Shown here piece after piece: positions 1,712-57,221 of a stretch of DNA of 64,000 nt. Each line of letters begins with the position of its first letter. Positions within the stretch are counted from its first letter, which is position 1. Location of the stretch: positions 1 through 64,000 of IMG/VR virus record IMGVR_UViG_3300038424_000251. The stretch is one strand, 5' to 3'. The notes beneath the pieces are model-generated. The model worked only from the letters and a program-made list of their open reading frames with translations. It ran no database searches and had not been told where the DNA came from. The translations under genes were made by a program, and so were the position numbers.

Positions 1712-1732
1712 TATATTTATTAATTTAAGGTT

Positions 1733-1996
1733 ATGATACGAAAGATAATAAAAAAAATAGATAATAAGAAGGTTATAATTAATATTCCTGTTATTGATAT
1801 CAATGATTATCAGGCTGTAGATAATAGTGGAGTTGGTAGTGGAATTGGCGGACTATATGGACCTACTACCACTAATTTTATAAATTTAATCGATGCTCCT
1901 AAACAAATAATATCAGAAGTTTTTATAATAACTGAAGATAATAATAATATTTTTAGAATTACAGAAGATGGACTACTATGTAGAGTATTGGAGTAA
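1733..1996 (+). CDS. Hypothetical protein, probably virion-associated
   Basis: ORF follows a TATTTAT motif; ITED repeated; lies in the fibre cluster. Confidence 0.5.
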   Translation: MIRKIIKKIDNKKVIINIPVIDINDYQAVDNSGVGSGIGGLYGPTTTNFINLIDAPKQIISEVFIITEDNNNIFRITEDGLLCRVLE

Positions 1997-2012
1997 ATGA
2001 TAAAAATTGGTT

Positions 2013-2537
2013 ATGGCACAGTCGGTTGTTAAAATTTCTCAATTACAAAGTATTTCTGGGTCTCTTGGTAATAATGATTTGGTTGAAGTTTCTCAAAATA
2101 TTGGGATAAATTTATATACAAGTTCAAAAGCTACAATGGCACAAGTAGCTGATTTCATTACAATTCCCGTTGGTGGTGTCATTGCTTGGATGTTATCGCT
2201 GGTAGGCACACCAGCATTGCCAAATAGATATGTACAGTGTAACGGACAAGTATTGACAGACCCTCAAAGTCCTTATAGTGGTTCGATAATTCCTAATCTT
2301 AACGGAACAAATAATAGAACTCAAAGATTTTTACGTGGTTCTACTACTTCAGGTGCTACAGGAGGAAGTGATACAAATATACATTCTCATAGTTCTACTT
2401 TAACTTCTGCATGTTTCTATGCAGGCAGTGGAACAATGTTTATAAATACTTGGGATTATAATGAACGTAGTGGTGATGAAACTATATCCGTTCTTCCGAG
2501 TTATTATGAGATTGTCTGGATAATGAGAATAAAATAA
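2013..2537 (+). CDS. Tail fibre/collar-domain protein (paralog of 2..487)
   Basis: N-terminal VKISQL...DLVEVSQ; C-terminal domain aligns with the first ORF (GTPALP, VQCNGQ, TDPQSPYSGS, TQRFLRGSTTSG, LPSYYE). ATG at 2013 preferred to TTG at 2007. Confidence 0.7.
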   Translation: MAQSVVKISQLQSISGSLGNNDLVEVSQNIGINLYTSSKATMAQVADFITIPVGGVIAWMLSLVGTPALPNRYVQCNGQVLTDPQSPYSGSIIPNLNGTNNRTQRFLRGSTTSGATGGSDTNIHSHSSTLTSACFYAGSGTMFINTWDYNERSGDETISVLPSYYEIVWIMRIK

Positions 2538-2540
2538 AAA

Positions 2541-3068
2541 TTATTTTCTTGGAGTAAAATTTACTGGGTCTAATAAAGGAGCTATTTCCTGTTCGCCACA
2601 GTCGGCCAAATATGATTTTACTTTTGGATTTTTTAATGCTTCACGGAATGATTGTTTCCATGTTATAGGAACGGGATTACCTGCTTCGTTGATATCTGGA
2701 TTATTATGAATTCTCTTTGCTTCTGACATCCAAGAACGAGTTACTTTATTAGTATGCTTGCGAATTCTCTCTCTATGTGATTCATTTGTATCATTAGGTT
2801 TTCGCAAACCGTTAGTTTTTATCTTAATCCAGATTTTATGTGGTTTTTCATCTTCATTGATATAAATAGAAGCACCTGAACGGTGTGTTTGCCAATCATT
2901 TCCTTCCATGTAACAGAACCAGTTTTTTCCTTCTACAATACCATCCCAATTTGGCGAACCGTCATTAAATCCTCCGGGCGTAGGGTATAGTTTAGGGTCA
3001 GGCGACCTATTAACGGCAGGAGCATGGCTAATCCATTCGATTATTTGAAGTAAAGTTTTTAGTTTCAT
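2541..3068 (-). CDS. Hypothetical protein with MKLKTLLQIIE leader
   Basis: Shared leader motif; TATTTATA 4 nt upstream of ATG on the minus strand. Confidence 0.6.
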   Translation of the reverse strand: MKLKTLLQIIEWISHAPAVNRSPDPKLYPTPGGFNDGSPNWDGIVEGKNWFCYMEGNDWQTHRSGASIYINEDEKPHKIWIKIKTNGLRKPNDTNESHRERIRKHTNKVTRSWMSEAKRIHNNPDINEAGNPVPITWKQSFREALKNPKVKSYLADCGEQEIAPLLDPVNFTPRK

Positions 3069-3087
3069 TGAATATAAATATGATGTA

Positions 3088-3981
3088 TTACTTGTAAGAT
3101 TCCCTTAATAAATTTAACTTTGAATCTCTTTGTGTGATTGTTATTCCCTGTTTCTTAAAAAAGTTTTCAACAGTATTCATATCATCTTCGGTAAGCATAC
3201 CTACATCCCAATATACCATACCTGTCTTTTTACCTTCTTCTGAAAAATGAAAACGAAAACGAACATTTGACCAATTGTGTGAAAATTCAGGTTCCCCACT
3301 ATGTTCTACACCATGATATCTTGATGATGGCAACCATTTATAGACAACTTCTCCATATTTACCTATCAAACCCAATCCCCATCGCCTTTCCTCTTTAGAT
3401 TCTTTTAAGTCATGATATTTAGCAATCCATTTTTTCCTTGTTTCAGACCTATCAGATGAGTACCGATTCATCATATCTTCTGCTTGTTTTCTACTAAATC
3501 CTAAATGACCGATGAGAAAATCTTTTAGTTCTGAGGTATAAGCTCTTATTTCTTCTGGGTCACCATAATATTTGTCACCCATCATTAGTGCATCATAAGT
3601 TATCTTATTGAATAGTTTTTTATGATAATTTATTGCATGAACTAATTCGTGATAAATAACACTGTCCACATATGCAGCATATTTACTTGAAGAATTATAG
3701 CGACCATGATAGACTCCCCCTATGGTTATAGTATCATCCTTAAAATTATATTCACCATATGGTAGAGTATCTTCTGAATAATATGTGTAACGAATTCTTA
3801 TGGATAGAATTTTATTTAGAAAGACATCAATTAAATCGTTCATAGAAAGACCAAACATTAAAAGTTGTTTAGAATCATATTCTTTTGGGAATGTTTTCTG
3901 CATATAAGTTCGCAAAGGTTCTCTAAATCTTTCCAAATCTCCAAAAAGATTTTCTAATAACAATATTTTTAATTTAATCAT
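3088..3981 (-). CDS. Leader + HExxH zincin-like domain + shared C-terminal domain
   Basis: MIKLKILLLE; YHELVHAINY with downstream YYGDPEEIRAY; the C-terminal module after DLKE resembles the ends of 5322..7064 and 27977..29086. Confidence 0.6.
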   Translation of the reverse strand: MIKLKILLLENLFGDLERFREPLRTYMQKTFPKEYDSKQLLMFGLSMNDLIDVFLNKILSIRIRYTYYSEDTLPYGEYNFKDDTITIGGVYHGRYNSSSKYAAYVDSVIYHELVHAINYHKKLFNKITYDALMMGDKYYGDPEEIRAYTSELKDFLIGHLGFSRKQAEDMMNRYSSDRSETRKKWIAKYHDLKESKEERRWGLGLIGKYGEVVYKWLPSSRYHGVEHSGEPEFSHNWSNVRFRFHFSEEGKKTGMVYWDVGMLTEDDMNTVENFFKKQGITITQRDSKLNLLRESYK

Positions 3982-4441: not shown

Positions 4442-5310
4442 AATTGTACAAAGAAATAGTGAACATCTTCATCTAAATCATAGGCCCAAACTATAAAGTG
4501 TCTAGTATAAGGAGATATATTTCTAGCAAATTCAAATTGATGCCTATCTATTTTTTTTCTTAAAAAATCTGGAACATCGCATCTTGATAAAAATAAATGT
4601 TTATTAACTATTTGTTTTTGACTATTAGGAATATCTTTTGGATCACCAACAAGATGTTCCATTTCTGTGGCATCCGATGCTATATAGTTTCTAAATGATG
4701 GGTCATTAAGACCTGTTTTACAATTTCCTACATAACCATACCTTTTCCCACCTTCTGTTAATACAGTTTCATTATTTTCTAATCTAAAATAAGATTTACC
4801 GCCTTGTATTGGAGAGTAACAAATTTCTCTGATTGAAACTTTTAATTTCAATCCTTCTTTTATATGAGAAAATTTTCCTTTTTGGACATAAGCTAATGTT
4901 AAATGTGGGTTATATTCCGGGTAATCATTTTCATTCAGATAAATTCCTGAAAGTTCGTTTAATTTTTTTAAAACTGGACTGTTTACTTTAAACATTGCTA
5001 CATCATATTGGGGCGATGAAACAAATTTATCTAATCCTGTAAGTTCAACAACAAAAGGTTTTTGTCCTTTAAGAAGTTGACGAACTTCCAATTCATTTAA
5101 ATCCTTCAAAAATCCATAACGAATAGTGACATGACTTTCCGTTTCTCTGCCATATTCCCCGTTTTCTACATATAAATCATTGTTATTGATTAGTTGTTTA
5201 CTAAATTTTAAAATAGAATCAGATGATTCTTTTGGAATCATAGCCATCAAACAACCTTTTTTAGCCGTTGCGTCTCTATTTTCATTTACCATTTCTTTTA
5301 GATTTATCAT
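4438..5310 (-). CDS. 2H phosphoesterase (T4 gp57B/Acb1-like) plus C-terminal module
   Basis: Two HxT motifs, SHVTIRYG and YNPHLTLAYV; leader MINLKEMVNE; second module begins after VLTE. Confidence 0.75.
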   Translation of the reverse strand: MINLKEMVNENRDATAKKGCLMAMIPKESSDSILKFSKQLINNNDLYVENGEYGRETESHVTIRYGFLKDLNELEVRQLLKGQKPFVVELTGLDKFVSSPQYDVAMFKVNSPVLKKLNELSGIYLNENDYPEYNPHLTLAYVQKGKFSHIKEGLKLKVSIREICYSPIQGGKSYFRLENNETVLTEGGKRYGYVGNCKTGLNDPSFRNYIASDATEMEHLVGDPKDIPNSQKQIVNKHLFLSRCDVPDFLRKKIDRHQFEFARNISPYTRHFIVWAYDLDEDVHYFFVQL

Positions 5311-5321
5311 AATTTTTATTA

Positions 5322-7064
5322 TTATATATGTCTAACATACGTTTTATAATCATTAAGACCTATATGTTGAGGTTTATATATTCCTTTTTTTACTAACCAA
5401 TCTTCTGCTTTATGTCTATCTTCGTCAGTTGGTGGAAATTCATTCCACAAAATTGTATTTTTTGGGGTTTCTACAAAATATCTCCATCTTGTTCCTAATG
5501 ATGTGGAACCTATTCTCCCATGTGGTAATTCAGAATGATCTACTGCCATAACATCAGGAACCATTTCATCATAAGCTTCTATATTTCCATGATAAACTAC
5601 TCCTATGTAACCACGCCTTTTATTTATATCTTTTGCTTGTTCGTATGGACTCATTATTTCACTCATAGGCTTCTTAATATTACCAAAAATCAATTTATAT
5701 AATTCTTTAACATACTGAATAAATTTTGGTTTATCCAATTCGTAAATTCTTTTAAGTTTTTTTCGAGTATCGGAATGTGCCCAATATAACATAGCTACAC
5801 TATGAGGATGAATTGATTGATGGCCAGCAATATCATCTATCAAAGCTCTGAATCCTTCTTTTTTATTTGTAGGCCAAAATTTGCTAATTATAATTTCAAT
5901 ATTATTTTTATAATCATAAAGATTGGTTTTGAATTCTATATCTCTTAATTCATGTTCTATTCTATTAAATTTGTCTCCCGGTTCTTTAACAGTTCCAAAA
6001 ACATCTACACCTCTAATAGATGGATTTCTAAACCATCTTAATGATTTTTTGGATAATCCATATTTTTTAGGAAATTTTTTACGAAATTTTTTAAGAGTAT
6101 GTCCTAAAATATCTTGCAATAAATGTCTAACTTCATGTTTAACGTCGCGTAGTTTTCTTTCCATTGATGTGTTAAATTGTTCAATTAATTCTTCTACACA
6201 AAATGTTATATAAATAGCATTTTTTCCTGAGTCATAATAATCAGTACCTCCTAATGTTTTAGGGAGGGAATTATATTCTTCGTATGTTTCTACTGCTTTA
6301 AAATAAATCCAAAATGTTTTAAAATAACCTTCTCCTTCAATACTTGGTGTTCTGTAAAAGAACATATTTTGTTTAATTTTTATTGGAAATGCCATAATAA
6401 CCATCTCACCATTAGGAGATTTAAAAGGTTTAAGAGTTTCTCCTGATTTTATTTCTTGATATTTATTACCCACAATTTTATATGGATGGGCTAATGTTCC
6501 AAAAGACCTTGCCACATACGATTGAAGCATATCAGGAGATTTAGTTTGATACTTCTTTGATTTAAGGAAGGCTTCTATAATATAACCAGCAGCAGATTTG
6601 GTGATATCTATTACTTGTTTTTCAATTTCTAATGGAATCTCAAATGCTTCATTTAATTTTTTTATTTCAGGTCTTCTAAACATCGTAGGTCCAAAAAAAC
6701 TTGAAAGACTATAATCTTTTTTTCTTCCTCTATTATGTATGAATCCTAACGATTTATAAAATTTATCTAATTTCTTTTTGTACCGTTTTTCTGCTTCAGG
6801 AGAAAGAGTAATAATTAATCCGTGTTTATCAGCAAATGATTTAATGGCTTCTATAACTTTTCTTCCTATTCCTTGTTTACGAAACTCTTTCTTTATTTTT
6901 ATATCACGTAGATGAAATATATCTTGCCTGTAGCTTATATTAAAAAATAAACTTTCTAATTGAGGATACTGATGGATTAAGGACTGACGAAAATCTTCTG
7001 TCTCTTTATCAAGGTCAGTCTTATCTCCAAATCCTTCTATTATTAATGGTTTGAGTTTTATCAT
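5322..7064 (-). CDS. Multidomain: leader + GNAT + HExxH zincin-like + shared C-terminal domain
   Basis: MIKLKPLIIE; FRKQGIG...KFYKSLGF (GNAT motifs); KHEVRHLLQD; C-terminal VDHS..RWRY..NTILW. Confidence 0.65.
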   Translation of the reverse strand: MIKLKPLIIEGFGDKTDLDKETEDFRQSLIHQYPQLESLFFNISYRQDIFHLRDIKIKKEFRKQGIGRKVIEAIKSFADKHGLIITLSPEAEKRYKKKLDKFYKSLGFIHNRGRKKDYSLSSFFGPTMFRRPEIKKLNEAFEIPLEIEKQVIDITKSAAGYIIEAFLKSKKYQTKSPDMLQSYVARSFGTLAHPYKIVGNKYQEIKSGETLKPFKSPNGEMVIMAFPIKIKQNMFFYRTPSIEGEGYFKTFWIYFKAVETYEEYNSLPKTLGGTDYYDSGKNAIYITFCVEELIEQFNTSMERKLRDVKHEVRHLLQDILGHTLKKFRKKFPKKYGLSKKSLRWFRNPSIRGVDVFGTVKEPGDKFNRIEHELRDIEFKTNLYDYKNNIEIIISKFWPTNKKEGFRALIDDIAGHQSIHPHSVAMLYWAHSDTRKKLKRIYELDKPKFIQYVKELYKLIFGNIKKPMSEIMSPYEQAKDINKRRGYIGVVYHGNIEAYDEMVPDVMAVDHSELPHGRIGSTSLGTRWRYFVETPKNTILWNEFPPTDEDRHKAEDWLVKKGIYKPQHIGLNDYKTYVRHI

Positions 7065-9481: not shown

Positions 9482-10033
9482 TTACAATAAAAATCTATTA
9501 AAGAACGCTTCATTTCTACCAGTCAATTTTTTTCCAGCAGAACTTCTAATATACTCTTTTTTTGCTGTATTCCAATTATTTCTCAATACTGCATCCGTAA
9601 ATTTTGGAAATTTTTCAAGACCGCCTAAACTGAAAGAAAAATCCATCAACATTTCCTCTTGTTTTTTGGATAACATAATATTTACATTATATGTTTTTTT
9701 GATATAATTGCGCATTCTTTGTTTTGCTATTTGTAAATCTTGAATAAGAATTTTTTCAGCAGTTTTTTGGTCTATACCATTTTTGAAATTGATAATTTCG
9801 TCATCTTCCAATTTATGACCATAAGCTATGTTCCATCCGGCTATATCTTTGTAAGGAAACCACAATTTTTTTTGCTTATCAAATCCAGCATATATTGAAT
9901 TTTCAACGGTTTTAATATATTTTATGAAATCGGGAGAAAATTCCTGATGCTGAATATGAATAGCAGGTGGTTGTGTTGCTGGTGACAAAGCTTCAATCAT
10001 AAATTCTTCAATAATTTCCCTTAGTTTAATCAT
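9482..10033 (-). CDS. Leader + phage lysozyme-like muramidase
   Basis: MIKLREIIEE; IKTVE...YKDIAGWNIAYGHKL...AEKILIQDL...LMDFSFSLG..L.KFPKF (GH24-like). Confidence 0.7.
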   Translation of the reverse strand: MIKLREIIEEFMIEALSPATQPPAIHIQHQEFSPDFIKYIKTVENSIYAGFDKQKKLWFPYKDIAGWNIAYGHKLEDDEIINFKNGIDQKTAEKILIQDLQIAKQRMRNYIKKTYNVNIMLSKKQEEMLMDFSFSLGGLEKFPKFTDAVLRNNWNTAKKEYIRSSAGKKLTGRNEAFFNRFLL

Positions 10034-10083
10034 ATCTATAAATAGGTGTGACTTTAGATGAAATATTCATATTTATAAGAGAT

Positions 10084-11295
10084 ATGAACGATGTACTACA
10101 ACCTTTAACGAATCCAACAACATTAGTTGACCAAGACCGAGTAAGATGGCCGGGAAGTGGCTCATCGGTTGTTGGAAGAACTCCATTTGGTTTTTACGAC
10201 AGTGATACTTCATTTCAAGTTGATGCACCATCAGCTGCTGTATGGGCAGCTTACCGTCTTGGTTATCCCATCGTTGATATTGAAATGCTTGATGTAAATT
10301 TTTATGCGGCTTTTGAAGAAGCTGTTAACGAATATTCTGCTCAGGTAAATCAATGGAATATACGCAACTATATGCAGGTATTTCAAGGACAAAAAGTTAC
10401 TGATTTGGGTAATCTTACAGGAAGAGCAGTTACAGGAACACCGTTACCTTACATAATTGAGCTTTCTAAAGAATATGGAAGAGAAGTTGGTGTTGGTGGT
10501 TATGCTGATTGGAAGAAGGGGTTTATTGTTACAAAACCTATGAAGCAGGTTTATGATTTACAAGAATTGTGGGGAGATAAAGTTGAAGATTGTAATAGAA
10601 TTGAAGTTATGAGAGTTTTTCATGATTTTCCACCGGCTTTTGCTCGTATTTATGACCCATTCTCTATGACGGGAATGAGTTATTCTAATGTATTAAATGA
10701 ATTGGGGTTTGGTGCATACTCTCCAGCAGTTCAGTTCTTGATGACTCCAATTTTTGAAGATTTACTTCGTGGTCAGGCTATTCAGTTTAATGATATGGTT
10801 CGTAAATCTGCTTTTTCTTTCGAGTTAACAAATAATAAACTGAGATTGTTTCCTATTCCAACATATGGATTTAAAGTATATTTTCATTATATGGTTCGCA
10901 ATGATAGATTAAAGGGAGAATTTGCTAACGCTCCAAATTATACAGGTAGTTATGTTGCAGATTATGCTAACATTCCTTATAATAATATAACATATAATAC
11001 AATTAATTCTGTTGGGAGACAGTGGGTTCGTAAGTATTTTCTGGCTCTTTGCAAGGAGCTACTTGGATGTATTCGTCAAAAATATCAAACACTTCCTATT
11101 CCGGGTGGTGATGTTACTTTGGATGGTGCAGAGTTGCGTAATGAAGCTCAACAAGAGAAAACAGACTTGATAACACAACTAAGAGAGTCTCTTGATGCAG
11201 CAAGTCAAAAATCACAAACTGAAAATCAAGCTTTGCAAGCTGAACAAATGCAAGAAACTCTAAAACGAGTTCCATTATTCATTTACATTGGATAA
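10084..11295 (+). CDS. Neck protein (T4 gp13-like)
   Basis: RLGYPIVDIE, EEAVNEYS, WVRKYFLALCKELLG..R.KY..PGGDVTLDG; true ATG placed after TATTTATA. Confidence 0.7.
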   Translation: MNDVLQPLTNPTTLVDQDRVRWPGSGSSVVGRTPFGFYDSDTSFQVDAPSAAVWAAYRLGYPIVDIEMLDVNFYAAFEEAVNEYSAQVNQWNIRNYMQVFQGQKVTDLGNLTGRAVTGTPLPYIIELSKEYGREVGVGGYADWKKGFIVTKPMKQVYDLQELWGDKVEDCNRIEVMRVFHDFPPAFARIYDPFSMTGMSYSNVLNELGFGAYSPAVQFLMTPIFEDLLRGQAIQFNDMVRKSAFSFELTNNKLRLFPIPTYGFKVYFHYMVRNDRLKGEFANAPNYTGSYVADYANIPYNNITYNTINSVGRQWVRKYFLALCKELLGCIRQKYQTLPIPGGDVTLDGAELRNEAQQEKTDLITQLRESLDAASQKSQTENQALQAEQMQETLKRVPLFIYIG

Positions 11296-16989: not shown

Positions 16990-17052
16990 TAAATTAAATC
17001 CGTCAGTCTCCGTAATCTAATTTAAATTTTCACATATTTATAAGGTAAACCG

Positions 17053-19287
17053 ATGCCTATAAGTAATACAAATCCACAACCAAATGATGTTGTTATTTTA
17101 CAACGTAATGCTGCTAACACGTATTATGGTGAAACACATATTTCTGGTTCCAGTTTAATTTTATATATTGACTCAACAGGTTCTCTTAATGCTGACAAGT
17201 CTGCATCGTTTTATTCAATTTTTATACCAACTTTTGCTTATAGCTCAAGCTATGTAAGTGGAAGTCATGGAGTAATAACTAATTTACTTACAAGCACTAT
17301 CAGTGGTAGTGATGTTATAATTTCATCCAGTATCGGAAAGACAGATTTAAACAGCAGTACGGTAAATATTTTTGGTAATGGACAAAATTTAGATTTTATT
17401 GAGACCAGTATTTATGGTAGTCTTACCACTCATTCAATAAATTTCTACACTTTCGGAACAAATATAGATTCTCAATGGCCATATACTAATCAAATGCCGT
17501 GTGGTACAATGAGATTTTTTGATAATGGCAATGCTACGGGTTTATATATGTTTAATGTGGGCCCCGGAGGTAATACTCTTTTTTCAACACAACAAGTAGG
17601 AGTTATGTCTGTTGGTTGTGTAAATGGAATAATCCCATGGCAACCCGGATTTAAACCAAATAAAGGGGTTGTAATTGGTATAGATTACACAACGGGTAGT
17701 TTTACCATACCTAACAATGGTTTAATAGTTCAAGGTAAAGTTGGTATAGGATTAATAAATACAACAAATTCTCTTGATGTTTCAGGTAATATTTCCTGTT
17801 CTGTCATAACCGCTTCATTATTTGGAACATCAAGTTATACAGTAAGTGCATCCTATTCATCTTACGCTAATTCCTCTTTAAGTGCTTCGTGGGCATCTTC
17901 ATCTCTTGTTTTGACCGCATCAGTTGCTTTGCAAGCAATTAGTTCAAGTTATGCTTTAAGTGCTTCTTGGGCTTCAAATGGAGGTGGTTCGTCTGTGAGT
18001 GCATCATGGGCATCTTCATCAATTAGTTCAAGTTATGCTATAACTGCTTCTTATTCTCTTTCATCTTCTATTGTAAATATTTCATTTATTAGTTCATCAT
18101 TATCTTCATCTTGGGCTAGTCAATCGTTGAGTGCATCTTGGGCGCCTGCTTTACCACCTGTATTCAATTATCAAACCGGGTCATACACATTACAAAATAA
18201 TGATATGAGTTATGAAATTGTAGTTAATTCACCAGTTTTTTCCATATTAACAATACCATCAGGATTATCTTCTTCATTTTATTGTAGTATTTATCAAAGC
18301 GGGTCAGGAAGAGTATTTTTTACAGGTTCATTGGGAGTAAATATTAGAAGTATAAATAATATATATTCATCCGCCGGGCAAGGTTCTCTTGTTAATATTT
18401 CTACGGGTCAAAGTGGAGAATATATCTTATCAGGAGAATTGGACTATTTTGATGCTCAATTGGTTGGTTGGGAAGATTTTTCAACATTTCCTGTTGGATA
18501 TTATGCAAATACAACATCCAGTGCAACATTATGGGCAAGTCCTCCTACAATTAGTGGGTCATTTTATATTGGTTCTATATTTCCAATTCGTTTTTCACAA
18601 TCTGCAAATTATTTACGGATGACGGCATCCAATTTTTACATGGGTAAAATGTATAATGGAAATAATTACAATGTTGTTAGAGTTGGTATGTTATGTTCTT
18701 TAACACCGAATGGGACAGGTAATATAGCTGGAGCTTTATACTGTGGAGTACAAACGGGTTCAATAAAAGGAGACTCGACAACAGGACAACTTCAAAATTC
18801 TTTCTATACATATATGTCAAATGCTGCACCCGATTTTGCATATGTTAATGCACCTGATGCATATTATACCGACGCACCCGGTGGTGGACACAATTATTCC
18901 ACGGGTAGTTATATAGCTGCAAGTAACAACATTGGTATGGGTTGGGGAACTTCCTTATCAGGTATACCTGCGTTTTTGTCATTTCCTTATCGTAGAGGAT
19001 TTCTTGGGATACAGTTTAATAAATCAGGAAGTTCGGTTTGGGCTTTATATGCTTATCAAGGATGTGGTGATATTGATTATACTTATAGTGATTTAAGAAA
19101 TTGGTTGGAAACAGGCAAAATGGGGAAACAATTTTCACGGTCAACTTCACCGCTTTATTGGACTACTACCATCACAGAATCTTATGGAGCTTTGGACAGC
19201 GCTATGTTCTTTTGGGATAGAACTAATTCAGCACCAGCTTCGCCATTTATTGTATATGCTGTTGGTGCTAGTAATTACATATATTAA
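17053..19287 (+). CDS. Virion fibre protein with SASWA repeats
   Basis: N-terminus resembles 14386 (PNDVxI); GKVGIG...SLDVSGNI fibre motif; SASWASSS repeats. Confidence 0.55.
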   Translation: MPISNTNPQPNDVVILQRNAANTYYGETHISGSSLILYIDSTGSLNADKSASFYSIFIPTFAYSSSYVSGSHGVITNLLTSTISGSDVIISSSIGKTDLNSSTVNIFGNGQNLDFIETSIYGSLTTHSINFYTFGTNIDSQWPYTNQMPCGTMRFFDNGNATGLYMFNVGPGGNTLFSTQQVGVMSVGCVNGIIPWQPGFKPNKGVVIGIDYTTGSFTIPNNGLIVQGKVGIGLINTTNSLDVSGNISCSVITASLFGTSSYTVSASYSSYANSSLSASWASSSLVLTASVALQAISSSYALSASWASNGGGSSVSASWASSSISSSYAITASYSLSSSIVNISFISSSLSSSWASQSLSASWAPALPPVFNYQTGSYTLQNNDMSYEIVVNSPVFSILTIPSGLSSSFYCSIYQSGSGRVFFTGSLGVNIRSINNIYSSAGQGSLVNISTGQSGEYILSGELDYFDAQLVGWEDFSTFPVGYYANTTSSATLWASPPTISGSFYIGSIFPIRFSQSANYLRMTASNFYMGKMYNGNNYNVVRVGMLCSLTPNGTGNIAGALYCGVQTGSIKGDSTTGQLQNSFYTYMSNAAPDFAYVNAPDAYYTDAPGGGHNYSTGSYIAASNNIGMGWGTSLSGIPAFLSFPYRRGFLGIQFNKSGSSVWALYAYQGCGDIDYTYSDLRNWLETGKMGKQFSRSTSPLYWTTTITESYGALDSAMFFWDRTNSAPASPFIVYAVGASNYIY

Positions 19288-19358
19288 AAATAAATACATA
19301 TTGCATATGTCATATATGTATTGTATTGAGAATAAAAATCTTTAACAGTAAAAAAGTT

Positions 19359-19652
19359 ATGAATGAAAAAATAAAAATGAGTGATAATGAACTTGCAGAA
19401 GTAAAAATGTTACAAGAAAAATTTCATCAAAAAGTTTTTCAATTAGGACAATGGTGTTTGCAAAAATGGGATACAGAAAATAGAACTAAATCTATCAGTG
19501 AGCAAGAAATAAAGTTGAAGGATGAATGGAATAGTTTACAAAAAATGGAAAACGAATTGATAGAAAAATTGTTAAATAAATATGGTGAAGGTTCATTAGA
19601 TTTGAGGGCAGGCACATTCACCACTGAAAAAGAACCTACACCAAAACCTTAA
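19359..19652 (+). CDS. Small coiled-coil protein (possible fibre chaperone)
   Basis: Helical sequence ending L..KYGEGSLDL..GTF; follows the fibre genes. Confidence 0.45.
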   Translation: MNEKIKMSDNELAEVKMLQEKFHQKVFQLGQWCLQKWDTENRTKSISEQEIKLKDEWNSLQKMENELIEKLLNKYGEGSLDLRAGTFTTEKEPTPKP

Positions 19653-19764
19653 AAAGACTTGTGTTTTCAAAAACACAAATAATATACGTTTCAAAAAATT
19701 GACAATATTTATATTTAGGTCATTTAAGATGACTATAACCTATAAAAAATAAGAGGAAATAGAT

Positions 19765-22700: not shown

Positions 22701-22962
22701 TAAATATTTGGTATTTGAACAAAATGTAGCTTCTACACGCAACAAATTTTTGAGTATTGTTAATCCATATTTGGAATCAGTTCAACAAAGGTCAGGTCTA
22801 TATGCTTTCTTTGTGAAAATGGATGACGCTAATAATACACCTGATATTATTGATCGAAATATCCTTTATGGGCAAATTTATCTACAACCAACCAAGACGG
22901 CAGAATTTATTGTTCTTGATTTCAATATTTTGCCGACAGGTGCAAGTTTTCCTAACGCTTAA
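19765..22962 (+). CDS. Contractile tail sheath protein
   Basis: VSPGVFTREND, YYPWIKI, WFAPAGLNRG, RDTLYEGKVNPI, WGQKTLQ, RINVRRLL, QPTKTAEFIVLDF. Confidence 0.95.
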   Translation: MPITEGGTFSPDRNIVSPGVFTRENDVSGVAAGVANIGGAIVAPFAKGPAYSPVILTDANTLANEFGNPDGIYYGPYTAAQYLQEQGIVTICRVGGLTGYQQNYPFAIWAVKGQYTRSSSFGALNSGSSYVYFYGSASNQYSESISWASPTSKSMTINTASVTITFVGGAADDITLSPTANSGSLLYYGQTITLGTATLINATASVSQSQFSSSIAAGTFSASIVGPVPISFPNASYQFQSLALISASLSVNLGTCGFPLILLSGVITGAFGQYVGFTSAGSASFNPCILPNGAWTSQSNADMRLLAVLADTQAGGIQNLVAPGFLGSSLSSTNPITPSNPSTTIPLDFNLTLMNSNSTTPYGVYQFSLNSEDPSYIINVFGNDPTAGNPVKQVAGQKIEAAYLYSIYEDVIADVVASSSYWAIYGSALPSGSQTGQSLNFTDQYSRNLNEGDSVFSIQEAITPWVLSQAIAPYQSGSAPHRYELFRIHTIADGTYTNTQFKVQISNIKLAGTVAGSNWGSFTLTLRKYSDTDKRPIIVEQYNNLNLNPDDANFIARVIGDMYSYINFNGKVIEFGTYSNNSNNIRVEMSTNNYPVSAIPYGFEAYITPTNGEMGFWTPRMKYTKASVYGLSPGKYPSGITFNDAPTGADAELFNLYPQLSSGVGAADDNLQYFAPIPSFASSGGSYSSIGRNTIFALDLDYELYGVSTGFFLSGSNIVPTVYDPVNEPTYIKMRNFVFGFQGGFDGQSPSIPINVGGDIIAGNTQGLDCTNVNSAGSIGYAQAIAALGNADQYDINLIVTPGIVYEEHPYVTNLVVDMCEARGDCFYIMDTYVDSGNPSTGQITQVVSYASEFDTNYAATYYPWIKILDTYNNLIVTVPPSVILPSVYAASDKVAAEWFAPAGLNRGGISIATQVTDRTTHEERDTLYEGKVNPIASFPGSGIVVWGQKTLQNANTALNRINVRRLLINIKKFFASTAKYLVFEQNVASTRNKFLSIVNPYLESVQQRSGLYAFFVKMDDANNTPDIIDRNILYGQIYLQPTKTAEFIVLDFNILPTGASFPNA

Positions 22963-22989
22963 AACTAACATACACTGATTAATATACAG

Positions 22990-23022
22990 AAAGCCTCAAT
23001 CCGTAAGGTTTGGGGCTTTTTT
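22990..23022 (+). terminator. Rho-independent terminator after sheath gene
   Basis: AAAGCCTCAATCC-GTAA-GGTTTGGGGCTTT followed by T run. Confidence 0.75.
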
Positions 23023-23050
23023 ACTAAGTAAATGTCTATTTATTATTAAT

Positions 23051-25497: not shown

Positions 25498-25626
25498 GTC
25501 TCCTTATAAATTTATTTCAAAACATCCTTTTCAAAGTATTATTATTGCCTAATTTTTGGATCTCTTGTACACTATTATAGTTATTTATAGTACATTTTTA
25601 AATTGTACTTTAATAAAAGCAGTACA

Positions 25627-25655: not shown

Positions 25656-25682
25656 GTTATTTTAATTTATATTTATATTAAT

Positions 25683-29086: not shown

Positions 29087-29132
29087 TTTGATACTATTTA
29101 TATTCAACATCACAACATAAGGATGATTTTTT

Positions 29133-29695: not shown

Positions 29696-29729
29696 GTTTG
29701 TTATAAAGAATTTATCAATATTTATGTTT

Positions 29730-33694: not shown

Positions 33695-33745
33695 TTCTTT
33701 TGGTTTTTCACTATTTATAGTTTATAACACCAGAAGTGTATCCAT

Positions 33746-43025: not shown

Positions 43026-43066
43026 TTTTCAGAATTTATAGGAATATTTATACTTACGGTGATTAT

Positions 43067-44163: not shown

Positions 44164-44320
44164 AATTCACTAAAATAAAATAATTTTTTCGCTTTTTATA
44201 GGTTGATTTTTGAACGATTTCAGTGTATCTTTCATATTTATTAGTAACAAGACAAGACTTAACAAATTGTAGTTAACGATTGACTTATAAACTAATTAAA
44301 CTAATTAAAAAAATAATTAT

Positions 44321-45313
44321 ATGTTAAACATGGATAAAGTCCGCAATAAACTAGCGTCGTTCGACAAGACGAAAAAAGGCGGCAGAAAACTTACCGAAGA
44401 ACAACAAGCAAAAGTCGAAAAAATCAAAAAATACATTTGGAAGCCCGAACCAGGCAAACAAGTAGTTAGAATTGTTCCTTATCAATATCAACCCGATTTT
44501 CCATTCATTGAATTGAAATGGCATTATGACTTTAATGGAGATAAGGTGAGTTATTTAAGCCCATCAAGTGTTAATCAACCAGACCCTATTGTGGAATTGG
44601 CAAATAGACTTGAAAAGGTAAAAGAAACTTGGGGTAAGGGTAGAAAAATGCAACCAAAACTAAGAACCTACGTTCCTATCATAGTTCGTGGTAAGGAAGA
44701 AGAAGGTGTAAAGTTTTGGGGATTTGGCGCACGTGTCTGTGAGCAATTGATGTCAGCTATCAATGAACCAGATTACGGCGACATTACAGATTTGAATAAC
44801 GGATATGATATCACGGTTGACTTCAAGACTGCTGAAGAATTGAAAGCAGATTTCCCTGATACCAAGATTCTTATCAAACCAAAACCACGTCCAGTAATTG
44901 ACCCTGACCATCCAAAGGCCAAGGAAATTATGGAACTTATTACTAAGAAACAAATAAATATCTATGATATTTATAAGACTTCTTCTTATGAGGAATTAGT
45001 GACGGCGCTTGAAATTAAGTTGGAAAGTGAACGTAGAGGAATAGTCTCTGCTTCAGCTCTACGTGGAGCAGAAAGAACTGCAAAAACTCCAGTTGTTACT
45101 TCCACTCCTGAACCAGTAGAACCTGAAGATGATACTGTTGAAATTCCAACCGAAGAGGAAATTGCTGCAGCTACAGGTCCTGCTACAATAGCGGAAGTGA
45201 TTGCTGTTCCAGCAACTCCTGCCGTTTCTCCTTCTGCTCAAAAATCAAAGAAGATAAGTGTGCAGGATTTTGATGCAGCATTCAAAAATATCTTCCCTGA
45301 CAATAAGAAGTAA
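44321..45313 (+). CDS. Single-stranded DNA-binding protein (T4 gp32-like)
   Basis: WKPEPGKQVVRIVP, PFIELKWHY, GVKFWGFG, YGDITD...GYDI; acidic tail. Confidence 0.75.
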   Translation: MLNMDKVRNKLASFDKTKKGGRKLTEEQQAKVEKIKKYIWKPEPGKQVVRIVPYQYQPDFPFIELKWHYDFNGDKVSYLSPSSVNQPDPIVELANRLEKVKETWGKGRKMQPKLRTYVPIIVRGKEEEGVKFWGFGARVCEQLMSAINEPDYGDITDLNNGYDITVDFKTAEELKADFPDTKILIKPKPRPVIDPDHPKAKEIMELITKKQINIYDIYKTSSYEELVTALEIKLESERRGIVSASALRGAERTAKTPVVTSTPEPVEPEDDTVEIPTEEEIAAATGPATIAEVIAVPATPAVSPSAQKSKKISVQDFDAAFKNIFPDNKK

Positions 45314-49848: not shown

Positions 49849-51195
49849 TTAGAATCCATGAAGAGCTTCTTTTTCACGTTTCTGTTCAATTTTTCTTTCA
49901 ACTTCTATTTCAATTTCTTTCGTTAATTTTGCTAAATCAGCTAATGCCTTTAGTCTATATGTTAAACTACCACCATGTCTTTCTATATTACCCAATCTAC
50001 GTCTTTGACGTTCTCTAGAAGCAATGGCATGTTTTAAGCAGTATTCTCTGATGGTAGCAGGTTGTCCACAATCTATACAACGCTTTGCTTTTTTCATTCT
50101 TAATCGCCATTTATGTTGATTTGAAATGGGTAAATCAGAAAATTCGTCTTTAATTGGAGGACGACCTATTTCATTAATTATTTCAATTACATAATCATTA
50201 AAAGAAGGTTGTTGCTGTTGTTTTTTACGCTCTTTTTGGATTGCATCGTCAACTGCTTTATCAAATGCTAATTGCAATTTATATGTTTTGCTACCAAATC
50301 TTCTTGTTTTATAACCTAATGCACGTCTTTGAGCTTCTCTATAAATAATAGCATGTTTTAAGCAATATCTTGCTACAACAGCAGGTTCTCCACATATTAT
50401 ACATTTATTTTCTTTTTCTCTTCTTAGTTGATATTTTCTTTGTCTTGAGATAGGTAAATCAGAAAATTCATCATGGTATGGTTTTCCAGTTACTTCATCA
50501 ATTACTTCTTTAATAAGTTGTTTGAAATCATTTTTTGTGATAAATGTTTGTTCTTCTAACTCATAACCAATTTTTGCGCCTCTCATCATATCTCGCCTAT
50601 ATTTTTCTCTAGCTCTCATTGCGGGTTTAAGAATATTTTTGAATCTATCGGTTTCTCTTCGCAGTTCTTCTTTGTCTTTTTTAAGTTTTGCACAATCTCT
50701 GCAAACCTGCATTTGATTTCCTTTGTCGTCTTTTTCTGCTTTTTTCTTAAAACACTTAATACAAATACCTTGTTTCAATGCTTGAAGTCGTCTAGCTTTA
50801 AGTTCATCTTCACATTTTTGACAAAGTTTTTTACCCGGCAGGGGTGGATTTGGACATCTCGCACAAGAACCACGTTTCTTTATTAATTTTTCTCTAGCTG
50901 CTCTAAATTGTTTAAGACAATCTTCACAATATATTCCTCTTTTTCCATTTGGTTTTATAATTGCTGGATTTTTACCACATTGAATACACAATCCTTTATT
51001 TCTTCTGGCTTGTTTAAGTTTCATTGAGGCAAATTTTTGTCTTTGTTTTGTAGTCATGCCTTTCAAGGCAAATTGTTCTTCCGGTGTTAATTCATACTCG
51101 GTGCTTGTACGAAAATCAGGACCATATTGCCTGTTATAAATTCTAACCTCTTTTATAACTTCCCAAATTAATTTATGGAATTCCATTGGTGTCAT
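49849..51195 (-). CDS. Basic multi-zinc-finger protein with repeated modules and KLIxEVIxE motifs
   Basis: Three CxxC...CxxC units, then two copies of DEFSDLPIS..(Q/H)K..LR...CxxCGxPA...YCLKHAI..RE.QRR.LG. Confidence 0.65.
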   Translation of the reverse strand: MTPMEFHKLIWEVIKEVRIYNRQYGPDFRTSTEYELTPEEQFALKGMTTKQRQKFASMKLKQARRNKGLCIQCGKNPAIIKPNGKRGIYCEDCLKQFRAAREKLIKKRGSCARCPNPPLPGKKLCQKCEDELKARRLQALKQGICIKCFKKKAEKDDKGNQMQVCRDCAKLKKDKEELRRETDRFKNILKPAMRAREKYRRDMMRGAKIGYELEEQTFITKNDFKQLIKEVIDEVTGKPYHDEFSDLPISRQRKYQLRREKENKCIICGEPAVVARYCLKHAIIYREAQRRALGYKTRRFGSKTYKLQLAFDKAVDDAIQKERKKQQQQPSFNDYVIEIINEIGRPPIKDEFSDLPISNQHKWRLRMKKAKRCIDCGQPATIREYCLKHAIASRERQRRRLGNIERHGGSLTYRLKALADLAKLTKEIEIEVERKIEQKREKEALHGF

Positions 51196-51306
51196 ATTTT
51201 ATAAATATAATCAGTATTTTAGTAGATGAATTAAAAAAGGATTGAAATGGTATAAAAAGTTTACTATTTAGGTTTATGGTGTAAAGTACACTAACAAATA
51301 AAATAT

Positions 51307-52701: not shown

Positions 52702-52833
52702 TTAGATAGCGCTATTTTCTCGTACCTGAAAAAAATCCAAACGCGAAAAAACATCAAAAAATAATTTCGTTCTAATCTCTGTTTTGGAAAAAGGAAATGC
52801 TAATTATTCTTCACGTAAAGACTTTTAGGATAT

Positions 52834-55952: not shown

Positions 55953-56060
55953 TTTTTGTTTTAGGTAAATATTTTTATATTTATAAATGAGATATTATTA
56001 TAGAAACAAGTAAATTTAAATAAATTTGCTTTTTAGATTGGAGTTATACATAATAGAAAT

Positions 56061-56378
56061 ATGAAGAATATTAAATGGGCTCATTTAGGAATTGCAGCCG
56101 GCGTTATTGCCGTGTTACCAATTTGTTGGCAAGTCATAACAACTGCGGTTGCCATCCAGCAAACACCACAAACAATAATTGCACTTCATCAAGATATGAC
56201 CAATAGCTTTTCTGAACTTTCAACCCAAATTAAAAATGTAGATGATGCATCTATTCGAAGAGATAATCAAATTGTAAATGAATTCCACAAAGAAATTGCA
56301 GATAATCGAAATGTCGCCAAAACTAATTTTGATAAAATTCTGAAACGCATCGATGGTGATATTAAAATTGACCCCTAA
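56061..56378 (+). CDS. Single-TM coiled-coil protein (possible lysis accessory)
   Basis: N-terminal hydrophobic helix, then coiled coil; late motif at 55978. Confidence 0.4.
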   Translation: MKNIKWAHLGIAAGVIAVLPICWQVITTAVAIQQTPQTIIALHQDMTNSFSELSTQIKNVDDASIRRDNQIVNEFHKEIADNRNVAKTNFDKILKRIDGDIKIDP

Positions 56379-56385
56379 ATTAAAG

Positions 56386-56414
56386 TTGACACAAATATTA
56401 TATTAGGTTATAAT
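56386..56414 (+). promoter_or_regulatory. Perfect consensus sigma70 promoter
   Basis: TTGACA (56386-91), 17 nt, TATAAT (56409-14); ATG 8 nt later. Confidence 0.85.
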
Positions 56415-56422
56415 CTATCCAT

Positions 56423-57199
56423 ATGCTGGAAGAAAAATATTTTGATGCTAAAAGAGTTATCATCAAGAAAATAGATAAGGCTGTAGCTGAAGAAATAATT
56501 ATAAAATATCATTATTCACATAAATGGTCTTTATGTCAGATTGCGTATGGAATTTTTTATATTACCGACAAGCAATGTCAATTTTTTAATGCTGTAGAGG
56601 AAACTCTTATTGGTTGTATTGTATATGGTCAGCCCGTTGGTCGTTCTGCTGCCGAATCTATTTCAAAGTTAGTTGGTGTTTACGAAGTATTTGAACTTAC
56701 TAGATTATTCATTCATGATGGATACGGTAAAAATATAGAAAGTTATTCAATATCAAAATCTCTAGAACTTGTTAAAAGAGATTTCCCACATATTAAAGCA
56801 ATAATTTCTTATGCAGATGGTGAGCAGGGACATAAAGGAACTATTTATCAGGCTTGTAATTTTCATTATCAAGGTAATTCTTCTTTAGCTTTGATGCCCA
56901 ATTACTCTGTTTCTTTAGTTGGACCTCCTTATAAATGGATTCACTCAAGAACTATTTCATCAACATATGGTTCGCATAACGTTGAATATTTGAAAAAAAA
57001 GATAGGTCATACATTCTGGAGAAAAAAAGAATCTTCAAAACACAGATATGTTTACTTACTTGGAAATAAAAAAGAAAAAAGAAAAATACTGTTAAATCTT
57101 AAACATCCATTTCAATCTTACCCAAAGAGTACAAATCATACCGATGAAATTGAACAAATCATAGTAAATCCTCTTACAGAAAATCAATTCTTTGGATGA
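56423..57199 (+). CDS. Mom-like DNA modification protein (GNAT fold)
   Basis: IIKYHYSH, GCIVYG, ELTRL, ESYSISKSL, IISYAD..QGHKGTIYQACNF.YQG, KHRYVY. Confidence 0.75.
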   Translation: MLEEKYFDAKRVIIKKIDKAVAEEIIIKYHYSHKWSLCQIAYGIFYITDKQCQFFNAVEETLIGCIVYGQPVGRSAAESISKLVGVYEVFELTRLFIHDGYGKNIESYSISKSLELVKRDFPHIKAIISYADGEQGHKGTIYQACNFHYQGNSSLALMPNYSVSLVGPPYKWIHSRTISSTYGSHNVEYLKKKIGHTFWRKKESSKHRYVYLLGNKKEKRKILLNLKHPFQSYPKSTNHTDEIEQIIVNPLTENQFFG

Positions 57200-57221
57200 A
57201 ATATTGATATTTATAAGAGAT

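What the first reader, a model, noticed from the sequence alone, without database searches (positions are those of the whole stretch)
1714..57215. Sense-strand TATTTATA motif heads late operons; it is the reverse complement of the T4 late promoter
TATTTAT(A/T/G) lies just upstream of genes on their own strand at 1714, 10070, 17035, 19706, 23037, 25670, 29095, 29719, 33712, 43045, 44235, 55978 and 57208 (+), and at 3073-80, 10037-44 and 51200-07 (-). This includes neck, sheath, tube and tape measure genes. T4 late promoters read TATAAATA on the sense strand, so this is the inverted word. Several copies are only 3-6 nt from ATG with no Shine-Dalgarno, implying leaderless mRNAs. The raw count is unremarkable in AT-rich DNA; the signal is the concentration in short intergenic gaps and the orientation.
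Basis: partly seen in the sequence, partly recalled or inferred. Interest (0 to 1): 0.6.

Follow-up and report, generated by a model that had tools for sequence, protein, structure and literature searches.

The report
Phage late promoter TATTTATA, often leaderless
A 365-kb T4-related phage from peat places the 8-base word TATTTATA just upstream of many virion genes, always pointing at the gene. It is most likely the promoter read by the phage's own sigma factor, a two-base variant of the classic T4 late promoter that often sits so close to the start codon that the mRNA can have almost no leader.

Summary
All 16 listed sites exist. Twelve of the 31 TATTTATA copies in the window lie in the 3.8% of it that is non-coding (p 6e-10), and all 12 point at the next gene. 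Across the whole 365-kb genome, copies ending 1-10 nt before a start codon number 20 in sense against 3 antisense. (A)TATTTATA ranks with the sigma70-like early-promoter words as the strongest oriented upstream 8-mers.

The word is conserved upstream of orthologous genes in dozens of IMG/VR relatives and two cultured phages, while the flanking sequence diverges. There is no -35 element.

The genome encodes a conserved sigma-like protein (genome 304639-305568). Its predicted fold best matches T4 gp55.

The late-promoter reading is therefore supported by comparison, but no transcript data exist. The "reverse complement of T4" framing is literally true but misleading. Read in the same orientation, the word matches TATAAATA at 6 of 8 positions (AA to TT in the centre).

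Leaderless mRNAs are plausible from the 2-7 nt spacing. The "no Shine-Dalgarno" argument fails, because the genome hardly uses Shine-Dalgarno sequences at all.

Verdict: a new variant of a known kind, of moderate interest.

The parts
1714..1721 (+). TATTTATT variant box, 11 nt before ATG 1733 (87-aa ORF 1733-1996)
   Evidence: lies directly after the stop of the preceding gene (491-1711)
3073..3080 (-). TATTTATA box, 4 nt before ATG at 3068 (ORF 2541-3068, 175 aa); short-spacing class
   Evidence: fills a 19-nt gap between two minus-strand genes
10037..10044 (-). TATTTATA box, 3 nt before ATG at 10033 (lysozyme-like ORF 9482-10033); one of a back-to-back pair
   Evidence: the 50-nt divergent gap holds two opposed boxes, each pointing at its own gene
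10070..10077 (+). TATTTATA box, 6 nt before ATG 10084 (head-tail adaptor/neck gene 10084-11295)
   Evidence: box conserved upstream of the orthologue in most IMG/VR relatives at 43-85% protein identity
17035..17042 (+). TATTTATA box, 10 nt before ATG 17053 (744-aa ORF 17053-19287)
19706..19713 (+). TATTTATA box, 51 nt before the tail sheath gene (19765-22962); the leader carries an AAGAGGAAA Shine-Dalgarno-like run
   Evidence: phrog_23 tail sheath, E 8e-72
23037..23044 (+). TATTTATT variant box, 6 nt before ATG 23051 (NUDIX hydrolase 23051-23635); follows a terminator-like hairpin
   Evidence: hairpin dG -14.4 kcal/mol plus a T run
25582..25589 (+).
25670..25677 (+). TATTTATA box, 5 nt before ATG 25683 (5'-3' deoxyribonucleotidase 25683-26189)
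29095..29102 (+). TATTTATA box, 30 nt before the tail tube gene (29133-29624); the leader has an AAGGA run
   Evidence: phrog_4542 tail tube, E 5e-20
29719..29726 (+). TATTTATG variant box, 3 nt before ATG 29730 (153-aa ORF); follows a G+C hairpin with a T run
33712..33719 (+). TATTTATA box, 26 nt before ATG 33746 (828-aa tape-measure-like ORF)
   Evidence: (weak phrog_167, E 1e-4)
43045..43052 (+). TATTTATA box, 14 nt before ATG 43067 (229-aa ORF)
44235..44242 (+). TATTTATT variant, 78 nt before the SSB-like gene (44321-45313); the weakest candidate
   Evidence: long distance, variant word, replication-type gene
51200..51207 (-). TATTTATA box, 4 nt before ATG at 51195 (448-aa ORF 49849-51195)
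55978..55985 (+). TATTTATA box, 75 nt before ATG 56061 (105-aa ORF)
57208..57215 (+). TATTTATA box, 6 nt before ATG 57222 (531-aa ORF); embedded in a 31-nt near-repeat of the 10070 site

Best explanation
(A/C)TATTTAT(A/T) is most likely the -10-type, single-element promoter of this phage's late (virion-gene) transcription class.

Proposed mechanism:
- Host core RNA polymerase is redirected to the box by a phage-encoded sigma factor (genome 304639-305568, outside the window).
- That protein has a sigma region-2 domain closest in predicted structure to T4 gp55.
- No -35 element is involved, as in T4 late promoters.
- The word is a same-orientation variant of the T4 box, TAT-TT-ATA against TAT-AA-ATA.

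At about half of the sites in this genome the box ends 2-7 nt before the ATG. Transcription must then start at or within a few bases of the start codon, giving leaderless or nearly leaderless mRNAs. At the other sites (sheath, tube, tape-measure-like) a leader of 26-75 nt follows.

Shown: sequence statistics, orientation, conservation across relatives, absence of a -35 element, presence and predicted fold of the sigma-like protein.

Inferred: that this protein reads this word, that expression is late, and where transcripts start.

Promoter architecture:
- There is no information outside the box in 49 aligned sites, apart from A/C at -1.
- A divergent 50-nt gap (10034-10083) holds two opposed boxes, each 3-6 nt from its ATG.

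Conservation:
- TATTTAT lies upstream of the neck-gene orthologue in about 45 of 54 IMG/VR loci at 43-85% protein identity, with unrelated flanks.
- It heads the portal, tube and other virion-gene groups in Flavobacterium phage immuto and Microcystis phage Mel-JY01.
- In the complete 171.7-kb relative G001, 43 sense copies end in -30..-1 against 17 antisense.
- In about 690 kb of related contigs, 49 of 138 and 97 of 192 distinct copies precede an ORF start within 40 nt. For the reverse-complement word the figures are 11 of 139 and 14 of 192.

Class segregation:
- Box sites are dense in the structural-gene parts of the genome (0-60 kb and 260-360 kb; portal at 336586, major capsid at 354066).
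- The TTGAC-N17-TAnAAT early-type sites are dense at 120-260 kb (Spearman -0.45, p 0.06).

Sigma factor:
- The ORF gives a weak Pfam Sigma70_r2 match (E 0.03).
- Its immuto orthologue weakly matches the gp55 profile phrog_234 (E 0.008).
- The two proteins are homologous (E 1e-42).
- The AlphaFold2 model has mean pLDDT 72.2 overall; residues 81-180 average 84-93 per 10-residue block.
- Its best structural match is T4 gp55 in 7d7c (Z 10.8, 118 residues aligned, rmsd 5.5 A).
- It is followed by sigma-2 domains at Z 8.5-9.5, rmsd 2.4-3.2 A over 85-94 residues.
- The nearest ESM Atlas clusters are named putative RNA polymerase sigma factor.
- Orthologues are present in all five relatives' genomes searched and are 33-88% identical across 26 IMG/VR loci.
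- No phage RNA polymerase was detected.

Leaderless class:
- Spacing is 2-7 nt at 27 sites.
- In G001, 7 of 10 short sites have exactly 3 nt. This puts the A of ATG on the +4 position, which is A in 32 of 35 long-leader sites.

T4 reference:
- The T4 box is 8 bp, starts at -13 and has no -35 element (PMC2988020).
Against: - There are no transcript data. The only runs holding this DNA are peat and wetland DNA assemblies.
- Timing is inferred from gene content, and some motif-headed genes are nucleotide-metabolism genes (NUDIX hydrolase, deoxyribonucleotidase).
- The link between the sigma-like protein and the word is by co-occurrence only.
- Sequence evidence for gp55 membership is weak. phrog_234 gives no hit in this genome. 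hhalign of the family alignment against T4 gp55 gives E 0.17. A profile search of PDB sequences found no sigma factor. Foldseek E-values are all above 0.06.
- Z values around 10 are not decisive for helical proteins, by the tool's own note.
- No gp45-type clamp was found with phrog_223.
- If T4 geometry held strictly (start 6 nt after the box), sites with 3-4 nt spacing would start inside or after the ATG.
- Spacing in this genome is spread over 2-7 nt rather than fixed.
Confidence: 0.7

Rival explanations
1. The word is a post-transcriptional signal rather than a promoter. It could be an AU-rich endonuclease processing site or a translation-initiation enhancer placed next to start codons in a genome that does not rely on Shine-Dalgarno pairing.
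For: - The sharpest peak is tied to the start codon (20 copies ending at -10..-1).
- The genome is Shine-Dalgarno-poor (17% against 14% in the control), so some other start signal must exist.
- Some copies sit in tiny gaps between co-directional genes (for example 3073-3080 in a 19-nt gap), where an internal promoter is not required.
Against: - In relatives the same word sits 10-40 nt from the ATG, with a broad spread. In this genome it also sits 26-75 nt upstream of the sheath, tube and tape-measure-like genes.
- Most genes, including those inside operons, lack it. Only 33 of 480 genes have it within 10 nt.
- Two opposed copies fill a divergent 50-nt gap where each gene needs its own promoter.
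- It sometimes follows terminator hairpins.
Confidence: 0.12
2. The word is a promoter, but it is read by a phage-encoded RNA polymerase (single-subunit, or a divergent multisubunit enzyme as in phiKZ and AR9), not by host polymerase with a phage sigma.
For: - This is a jumbo phage (365 kb), and some jumbo phages carry their own polymerases.
- Very short box-to-ATG distances (3 nt) fit compact promoters of non-canonical polymerases. AR9 is known to recognise the template strand, which would give meaning to the reverse-complement relation.
Against: - No match to T7-type RNAP (PF00940) or to the catalytic Rpb1 domain (PF00623) in the genome at E <= 1. The PF00623 control rang in 14 of 14 genomes. 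The PF00940 control rang nowhere, so that search is uninformative.
- The virion module is T4-like.
- A conserved sigma-like protein is present.
- Strong sigma70-type early promoters show that host polymerase is used.
Confidence: 0.08
3. The word is a weak or variant -10 element used by the host's own primary or alternative sigma factor, possibly with a phage activator. There would then be no dedicated phage sigma.
For: - The box is A/T-rich and begins with TAT, like a Pribnow box.
- The sequence-level identification of the phage sigma is weak.
Against: - The same genome has a separate, near-consensus TTGAC-N17-TGnTAnAAT class. The box lacks the conserved final T of TATAAT and any -35 or TG extension.
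- The word is conserved in phages of very different reported hosts, Flavobacterium and Microcystis. This points to a phage-borne reader.
Confidence: 0.07
4. Chance or compositional artefact: an A/T-only word that accumulates in A/T-rich intergenic DNA.
For: - The genome is 33% G+C.
- A control word of the same composition (ATAAATAT) is as enriched in intergenic DNA overall (46 of 141 against 40 of 117).
Against: - The orientation bias, the positional peak, the rank among all 65,536 8-mers and the replication in independent relatives are not explained by composition.
Confidence: 0.02

Closest known systems
Bacteriophage T4 late promoters (TATAAATA at -13..-6) read by gp55 with gp33 and the gp45 clamp
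   Same: - Single 8-bp A/T box with no -35 element.
- Heads virion genes on either strand.
- Six of eight positions are identical in the same orientation.
- The phage belongs to the wider T4-like group by sheath, tube, portal and capsid.
- It encodes a sigma-like protein whose best structural match is gp55.
   Different: - The central two bases are TT, not AA.
- The sigma-like protein is 309 aa. It has a lysine-rich N-terminal tail and an extra C-terminal four-helix domain that gp55 lacks.
- It is not recognised by the gp55 profile.
- No gp45-type clamp was found, and gp33 was not tested.
- Many boxes abut the start codon, which is not a described feature of T4 late genes.
Variant late boxes of distant T4-like phages (cyanophage S-PM2, KVP40 and 44RR similar; Aeh1 with a/gC at -13/-12), as reviewed in PMC2988020
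   Same: The same principle: the gp55-type box drifts by one or two positions in distant lineages.
   Different: - Described variants change the first positions of the box; here the central AA is changed.
- I found no paper reporting TATTTATA as a phage late promoter in the library searched. That library is incomplete.
Leaderless genes of bacteria (lambda cI from PRM; many genes in Actinobacteria and Deinococcus), where a -10-like signal lies about 10 nt before the AUG
   Same: - A -10-type element centred about 6-11 nt upstream of an ATG.
- No room for a ribosome-binding leader.
- ATG (23), never GTG (0), at the short-spacing sites.
   Different: - Here the signal is a phage-specific box used for a whole temporal class.
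- 5' ends are unmapped.
AR9/phiKZ non-virion RNA polymerase promoters (template-strand recognition)
   Same: Jumbo phage, with a short conserved late motif close to the start of transcription.
   Different: No phage RNA polymerase genes were detected. A sigma-like protein and sigma70-type early promoters are present.

Membership tests
T4-type late promoter / gp55 system | Single 8-bp A/T-rich box with no conserved -35 element | tested here: met
   49 aligned sites carry information only in the box and at position -1 (A/C); nothing at -45..-2.
T4-type late promoter / gp55 system | Box sequence TATAAATA on the non-template strand | tested here: not met
   The sense word is TATTTATA (6 of 8 identical). 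TATAAATA in sense shows no upstream peak.
T4-type late promoter / gp55 system | Box about one helical turn upstream of the transcription start (-13..-6) | not testable with these tools
   No RNA runs hold this DNA. Indirectly, the conserved A at +4 in relative G001 suggests a somewhat shorter distance.
T4-type late promoter / gp55 system | gp55-family sigma factor encoded by the phage | tested here: inconclusive
   - phrog_234 gives no hit in this genome.
- The immuto orthologue scores E 0.008.
- hhalign against T4 gp55 gives E 0.17.
- The predicted structure's top match is gp55 in 7d7c, Z 10.8.
T4-type late promoter / gp55 system | gp45-type sliding clamp as activator | tested here: inconclusive
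   phrog_223 and a T4 gp45 query found nothing. A divergent clamp cannot be excluded.
T4-type late promoter / gp55 system | gp33 co-activator | not tested
   It is a small, fast-evolving protein; no query was run.
Sigma70-family sigma factor | Region-2 (sigma-2) domain that binds core polymerase and the -10 element | tested here: met
   - Structure: sigma-2 domains of sigE, SigW, SigC and SigA match at Z 8.5-9.5, rmsd 2.4-3.2 A over 85-94 residues.
- About 35 of the top 50 Foldseek rows are sigma factors.
- Pfam Sigma70_r2 scores only 13 bits against a cut-off of 24.
- Atlas neighbours are named sigma factor.
Sigma70-family sigma factor | Region-4 (-35 binding / flap-binding) domain | tested here: inconclusive
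   The C-terminal domain folded alone (pLDDT 82.7) matches several sigma-4 domains at Z 5.1-5.5. Unrelated helical proteins score the same.
Leaderless mRNA genes | -10-type element centred about 10 nt upstream of an AUG, with no leader for a ribosome-binding site | tested here: met
   27 sites have 2-7 nt between the box and an ATG that opens an ORF.
Leaderless mRNA genes | Transcript 5' end at the A of the AUG | not testable with these tools
   No RNA data. Indirect support comes from G001, where the ATG A coincides with the conserved +4 A.
phiKZ/AR9-type phage RNA polymerase promoters | Phage-encoded multisubunit or single-subunit RNA polymerase | tested here: not met
   PF00623 and PF00940 give no match at E <= 1. 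Very divergent enzymes could escape, and the PF00940 control rang nowhere.

The most novel reading that the evidence does not exclude
A large, mostly uncultured clade of T4-related phages uses a previously undescribed late-transcription pair. The clade runs from 160-kb Flavobacterium phages to 250-480-kb jumbo phages of peat and freshwater. The pair is a two-domain (sigma-2 plus sigma-4-like) relative of gp55 and a TATTTATA box. In the jumbo branch, about half of the late transcription units are truly leaderless, which would be the first phage temporal class built largely on leaderless mRNAs.
Probability: 0.3. Interest if true: 0.7.

Novelty: new variant of a known kind. Interest (0 to 1): 0.5.

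Why it matters
- It gives a concrete, testable promoter-sigma pair for a widespread group of environmental T4-related phages. Two cultured members (Flavobacterium phage immuto, Microcystis phage Mel-JY01) could be used at the bench.
- It shows how the gp55-type box can change at its centre while keeping the outer TAT and ATA.
- It offers a marker for annotating late operons and true start codons in hundreds of metagenomic phage contigs.
- If the short-spacing class is really leaderless, it would show a phage committing much of its late programme to Shine-Dalgarno-independent, 5'-AUG-dependent initiation. That bears on how phages cope with hosts that do not use Shine-Dalgarno pairing.

Tried and rejected
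- **Near-identical DNA in cultured phages:** none found.
- **Direct T4 gp55 and gp45 protein queries, and the gp55/gp45 PHROG profiles, on this genome:** no hits. The sigma candidate emerged only by joining a weak Pfam hit to a weak PHROG hit in a relative.
- **PHROG and Pfam scans of the sigma candidate itself:** nothing usable.
- **Profile search against PDB sequences:** only a chance hit.
- **RNA evidence:** all 24 runs holding the DNA are peat or wetland assemblies guessed as DNA. Laying four of them on 17001-23000 gave only short, low-depth DNA contigs with no information on starts.
- **Terminator association:** weak in this genome (5 of 49 sites against 21 of 480 controls), so it is not used as an argument here. 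It is visible in distant relatives.
- **Shine-Dalgarno absence as an argument for leaderless mRNAs:** rejected, because the genome is Shine-Dalgarno-poor overall.
- **ATG exclusivity:** uninformative, since ATG dominates everywhere in my ATG-biased gene model.
- **Sigma-4 identity of the C-terminal domain:** left open.
- **Literature:** searches for the word as a phage promoter found nothing relevant.
- **Gene model caveat:** gene coordinates outside the window come from my own crude ORF and codon-bias model. Individual start codons may be off.
- **Not used:** the large protein database searches and the complex predictor.

Full report
**What the window is**

The window is the first 64 kb of a 365,299-bp IMG/VR virus record (33% G+C, estimated complete). 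It carries T4-like virion genes:
- head-tail adaptor/neck (10084-11295)
- tail sheath (19765-22962)
- tail tube (29133-29624)
- a tape-measure-like protein (33746-36232)
- a lysozyme-like protein (9482-10033, minus strand)

The portal (336586) and major capsid (354066) genes lie at the other end of the record, so the structural module wraps around the record ends.

The nearest cultured relatives are Microcystis phage Mel-JY01, Flavobacterium phage vB_FspM_immuto and, distantly, Rhodothermus phage RM378. A 484-kb uncultured phage is also related. The DNA is found in peat and wetland metagenomes.

Every listed copy is present. In the window:
- TATTTATD occurs 63 times against 43.6 +/- 7.0 in shuffles.
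- The 8-mer TATTTATA, counted on both strands, occurs 31 times against 13.9 +/- 3.5.
- Twelve of the 31 TATTTATA copies lie in the 3.8% of the window that my gene model leaves non-coding (p 6e-10). All twelve point at the downstream gene.

Genome-wide:
- Copies ending 1-10 nt before a start codon number 20 in sense and 3 in antisense.
- Over -60..-1 the counts are 32 and 11.
- Inside genes there is no strand bias.
- TATTTATA followed within 2-10 nt by ATG occurs 43 times against 15.6 +/- 2.6 in order-3 Markov simulations.
- 26% of copies are followed within 10 nt by an ATG opening an ORF of at least 50 codons. For most control A/T words tested the figure is 2-16%.
- Ranked over all 65,536 8-mers by sense-minus-antisense count upstream of genes, ATATTTAT and TATTTATA stand beside the words of a second motif, CGCTTGAC(T/A)TTT.

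**Two promoter classes**

The second motif is the -35 part of a near-consensus TTGAC-N17-(TG)nTAnAAT promoter, with 57 matches. It is concentrated at 120-260 kb.

The TATTTATA sites are concentrated at 0-60 kb and 260-360 kb, where the virion genes are. Per-20-kb counts are negatively correlated (Spearman -0.45, p 0.06). This looks like the early/late split of T4-like phages, but it is inferred from gene content only.

**Anatomy of the box**

Aligning 49 sense sites gives (A/C)TATTTAT(A/T) and no other conserved position from -45 to +32. There is no -35 element.

Position 8 prefers A, then T, then G.

The 50-nt divergent gap at 10034-10083 consists of little more than two opposed boxes, one 3 nt from the minus-strand ATG and one 6 nt from the plus-strand ATG. 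That arrangement is hard to explain by anything other than two promoters.

**Conservation**

- The box lies upstream of the neck-gene orthologue in about 45 of 54 distinct IMG/VR loci whose protein is 43-85% identical. The surrounding non-coding sequence is unrelated, and in distant relatives a terminator hairpin often precedes the box.
- In immuto and Mel-JY01 the box heads the portal, tube and other virion-gene groups.
- In a complete 171.7-kb relative (G001), TATTTAT ends in -30..-1 43 times in sense and 17 times in antisense.
- In about 690 kb of related contigs, 49 of 138 and 97 of 192 distinct copies precede an ORF start within 40 nt. The reverse-complement word does so in 11 of 139 and 14 of 192.

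A word kept across phages with reported hosts as different as Flavobacterium and Microcystis points to a phage-borne reader.

**The likely reader**

A 309-aa ORF (genome 304639-305568; locus L002:1090-2019) gave a weak Pfam Sigma70_r2 match (E 0.03). Independently, the gp55 profile phrog_234 weakly hit immuto gp118 (E 0.008). The two proteins are clear homologues (E 1e-42).

The family is well conserved. The 26 IMG/VR orthologues aligned are 33-88% identical to this protein. After a variable lysine-rich tail they share a core with a stretch that reads like sigma regions 2.2-2.3.

Structural evidence:
- The AlphaFold2 model has mean pLDDT 72.2; residues 81-180 average 84-93 per 10-residue block.
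- Its best match among Foldseek candidates re-aligned by VIA-align is T4 gp55 in the gp55-dependent open complex 7d7c (Z 10.8, 118 residues, rmsd 5.5 A).
- Next come sigma-2 domains of sigE, SigW, SigC and SigA at Z 8.5-9.5 and rmsd 2.4-3.2 A.
- About 35 of the top 50 Foldseek rows are sigma factors, although none reaches E 0.001.
- The nearest ESM Atlas clusters are viral "putative RNA polymerase sigma factor".
- Orthologues occur in all five relatives' genomes searched.
- The C-terminal four-helix domain, which gp55 lacks, resembles sigma-4 domains at Z about 5, but so do unrelated helical proteins.
- No phage RNA polymerase was detected.

Sequence-level membership in the gp55 family is not established, and no gp45-type clamp was found.

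**The reverse-complement idea**

TATTTATA is the exact reverse complement of TATAAATA. That follows from the near-palindromic nature of the T4 box.

In the same orientation the words differ only at positions 4 and 5: TAT-TT-ATA against TAT-AA-ATA. The T4 box starts at -13 and has no -35 partner (PMC2988020), and known relatives already vary it by one or two positions.

A same-strand variant read by a diverged gp55-like sigma is therefore the economical reading. Nothing here calls for template-strand recognition.

Some relatives carry the palindrome TATTTATAAATA, which contains both words.

**Leaderless transcripts**

In this genome 27 sites have 2-7 nt between the box and the ATG: two at 2 nt, five at 3 nt, seven at 4 nt, three at 5 nt, seven at 6 nt and three at 7 nt. 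If the box is a -10-type element, transcription must begin at or within a few bases of the AUG.

The neck-gene ATG at 10084 is the true start, because M-(N/S)-D is conserved in orthologues that have longer leaders.

In G001 the case is cleaner:
- Long-leader sites carry a conserved A at +4 after the box (32 of 35) and at +5 (26 of 35).
- Seven of ten short sites have exactly 3 nt of spacing, which places the A of ATG on that +4 position.
- Closer relatives of this phage show a bimodal spacing, 4-5 nt or about 20-30 nt.

Shine-Dalgarno-like words occur upstream of only 17% of the other genes, against 14% in a control window, so their absence at these sites means little. ATG dominates everywhere.

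The leaderless claim thus rests on geometry and is unproven.

**Limits**

- No RNA data could be obtained.
- Timing, start sites and the sigma-box pairing are inferences.
- Gene coordinates outside the window come from my own ORF and codon-bias model.
Several motif-headed genes are not structural.

**Verdict**

This is a real, oriented, conserved promoter-type signal. It is best read as a central-position variant of the T4 late box, served by a diverged gp55-like sigma factor, with a plausible leaderless subclass. It is a new variant of a known kind, of moderate interest.

Noticed in passing
genome-wide; in the window e.g. 56386, 62034, 63350 (+) and 53775 (-): A second strong oriented upstream motif, CGCTTGAC(T/A)TTT-N-(TG)nTAnAAT. 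It is a near-consensus sigma70-type promoter with 57 matches, concentrated at 120-260 kb of the genome, where TATTTATA sites are rare. It is probably the early class.
   Followed up: partly
window 10056-10086 and 57194-57224: The boxes at 10070 and 57208 sit in a 31-nt near-repeat (30 of 31 identical) that includes the last codons of the gene ending at 57199. In relatives L015 and L028 the neck gene is preceded by the 57208-type context. The copy at 10056 therefore looks like the remnant of a rearrangement that carried the promoter with it.
   Followed up: partly
whole genome: Shine-Dalgarno-like words are barely enriched upstream of genes (17% against 14% in the control), and leaders are A-rich (AAAAATAA and similar). 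This hints at a host with Shine-Dalgarno-independent initiation. The sheath and tube genes do carry purine-rich leaders. The sigma70-type early promoters argue against a typical Bacteroidota promoter type, so the host remains unclear.
   Followed up: partly
L083 (immuto) 828 and 11527; L057, L058 and L062 upstream of the neck gene: Some relatives carry the 12-nt perfect palindrome TATTTATAAATA, which contains both the TATTTATA word and the T4 word TATAAATA.
   Followed up: no
L084 (Mel-JY01) 5231-5458: The related Microcystis phage is annotated as encoding ribosomal protein S21 inside its head-gene module.
   Followed up: no
window 20401-20600 and 22201-22400: In two peat or wetland runs (X21, X20) these two short stretches of the sheath gene have 20-47x contig depth against about 3x elsewhere, with loose ends at 20521 and 22308. 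Another, more abundant genome in those samples seems to share these segments.
   Followed up: no
genome about 260780-260823 (outside the window): The box at 260824 is directly preceded by what looks like the 3' end of a tRNA gene (T-arm and acceptor stem ending in CCA).
   Followed up: no
window 19765-22962: The sheath protein is 1065 aa, but only residues about 750-1062 match sheath families. The N-terminal two thirds are shared only with Mel-JY01 and an uncultured 484-kb phage.
   Followed up: no
genome 304639-304870 (outside the window): The sigma-like protein and its orthologues begin with a variable, very lysine/arginine-rich tail of about 60-80 residues. The tail is predicted to be disordered and is absent from gp55 and cellular sigma factors.
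   Followed up: partly
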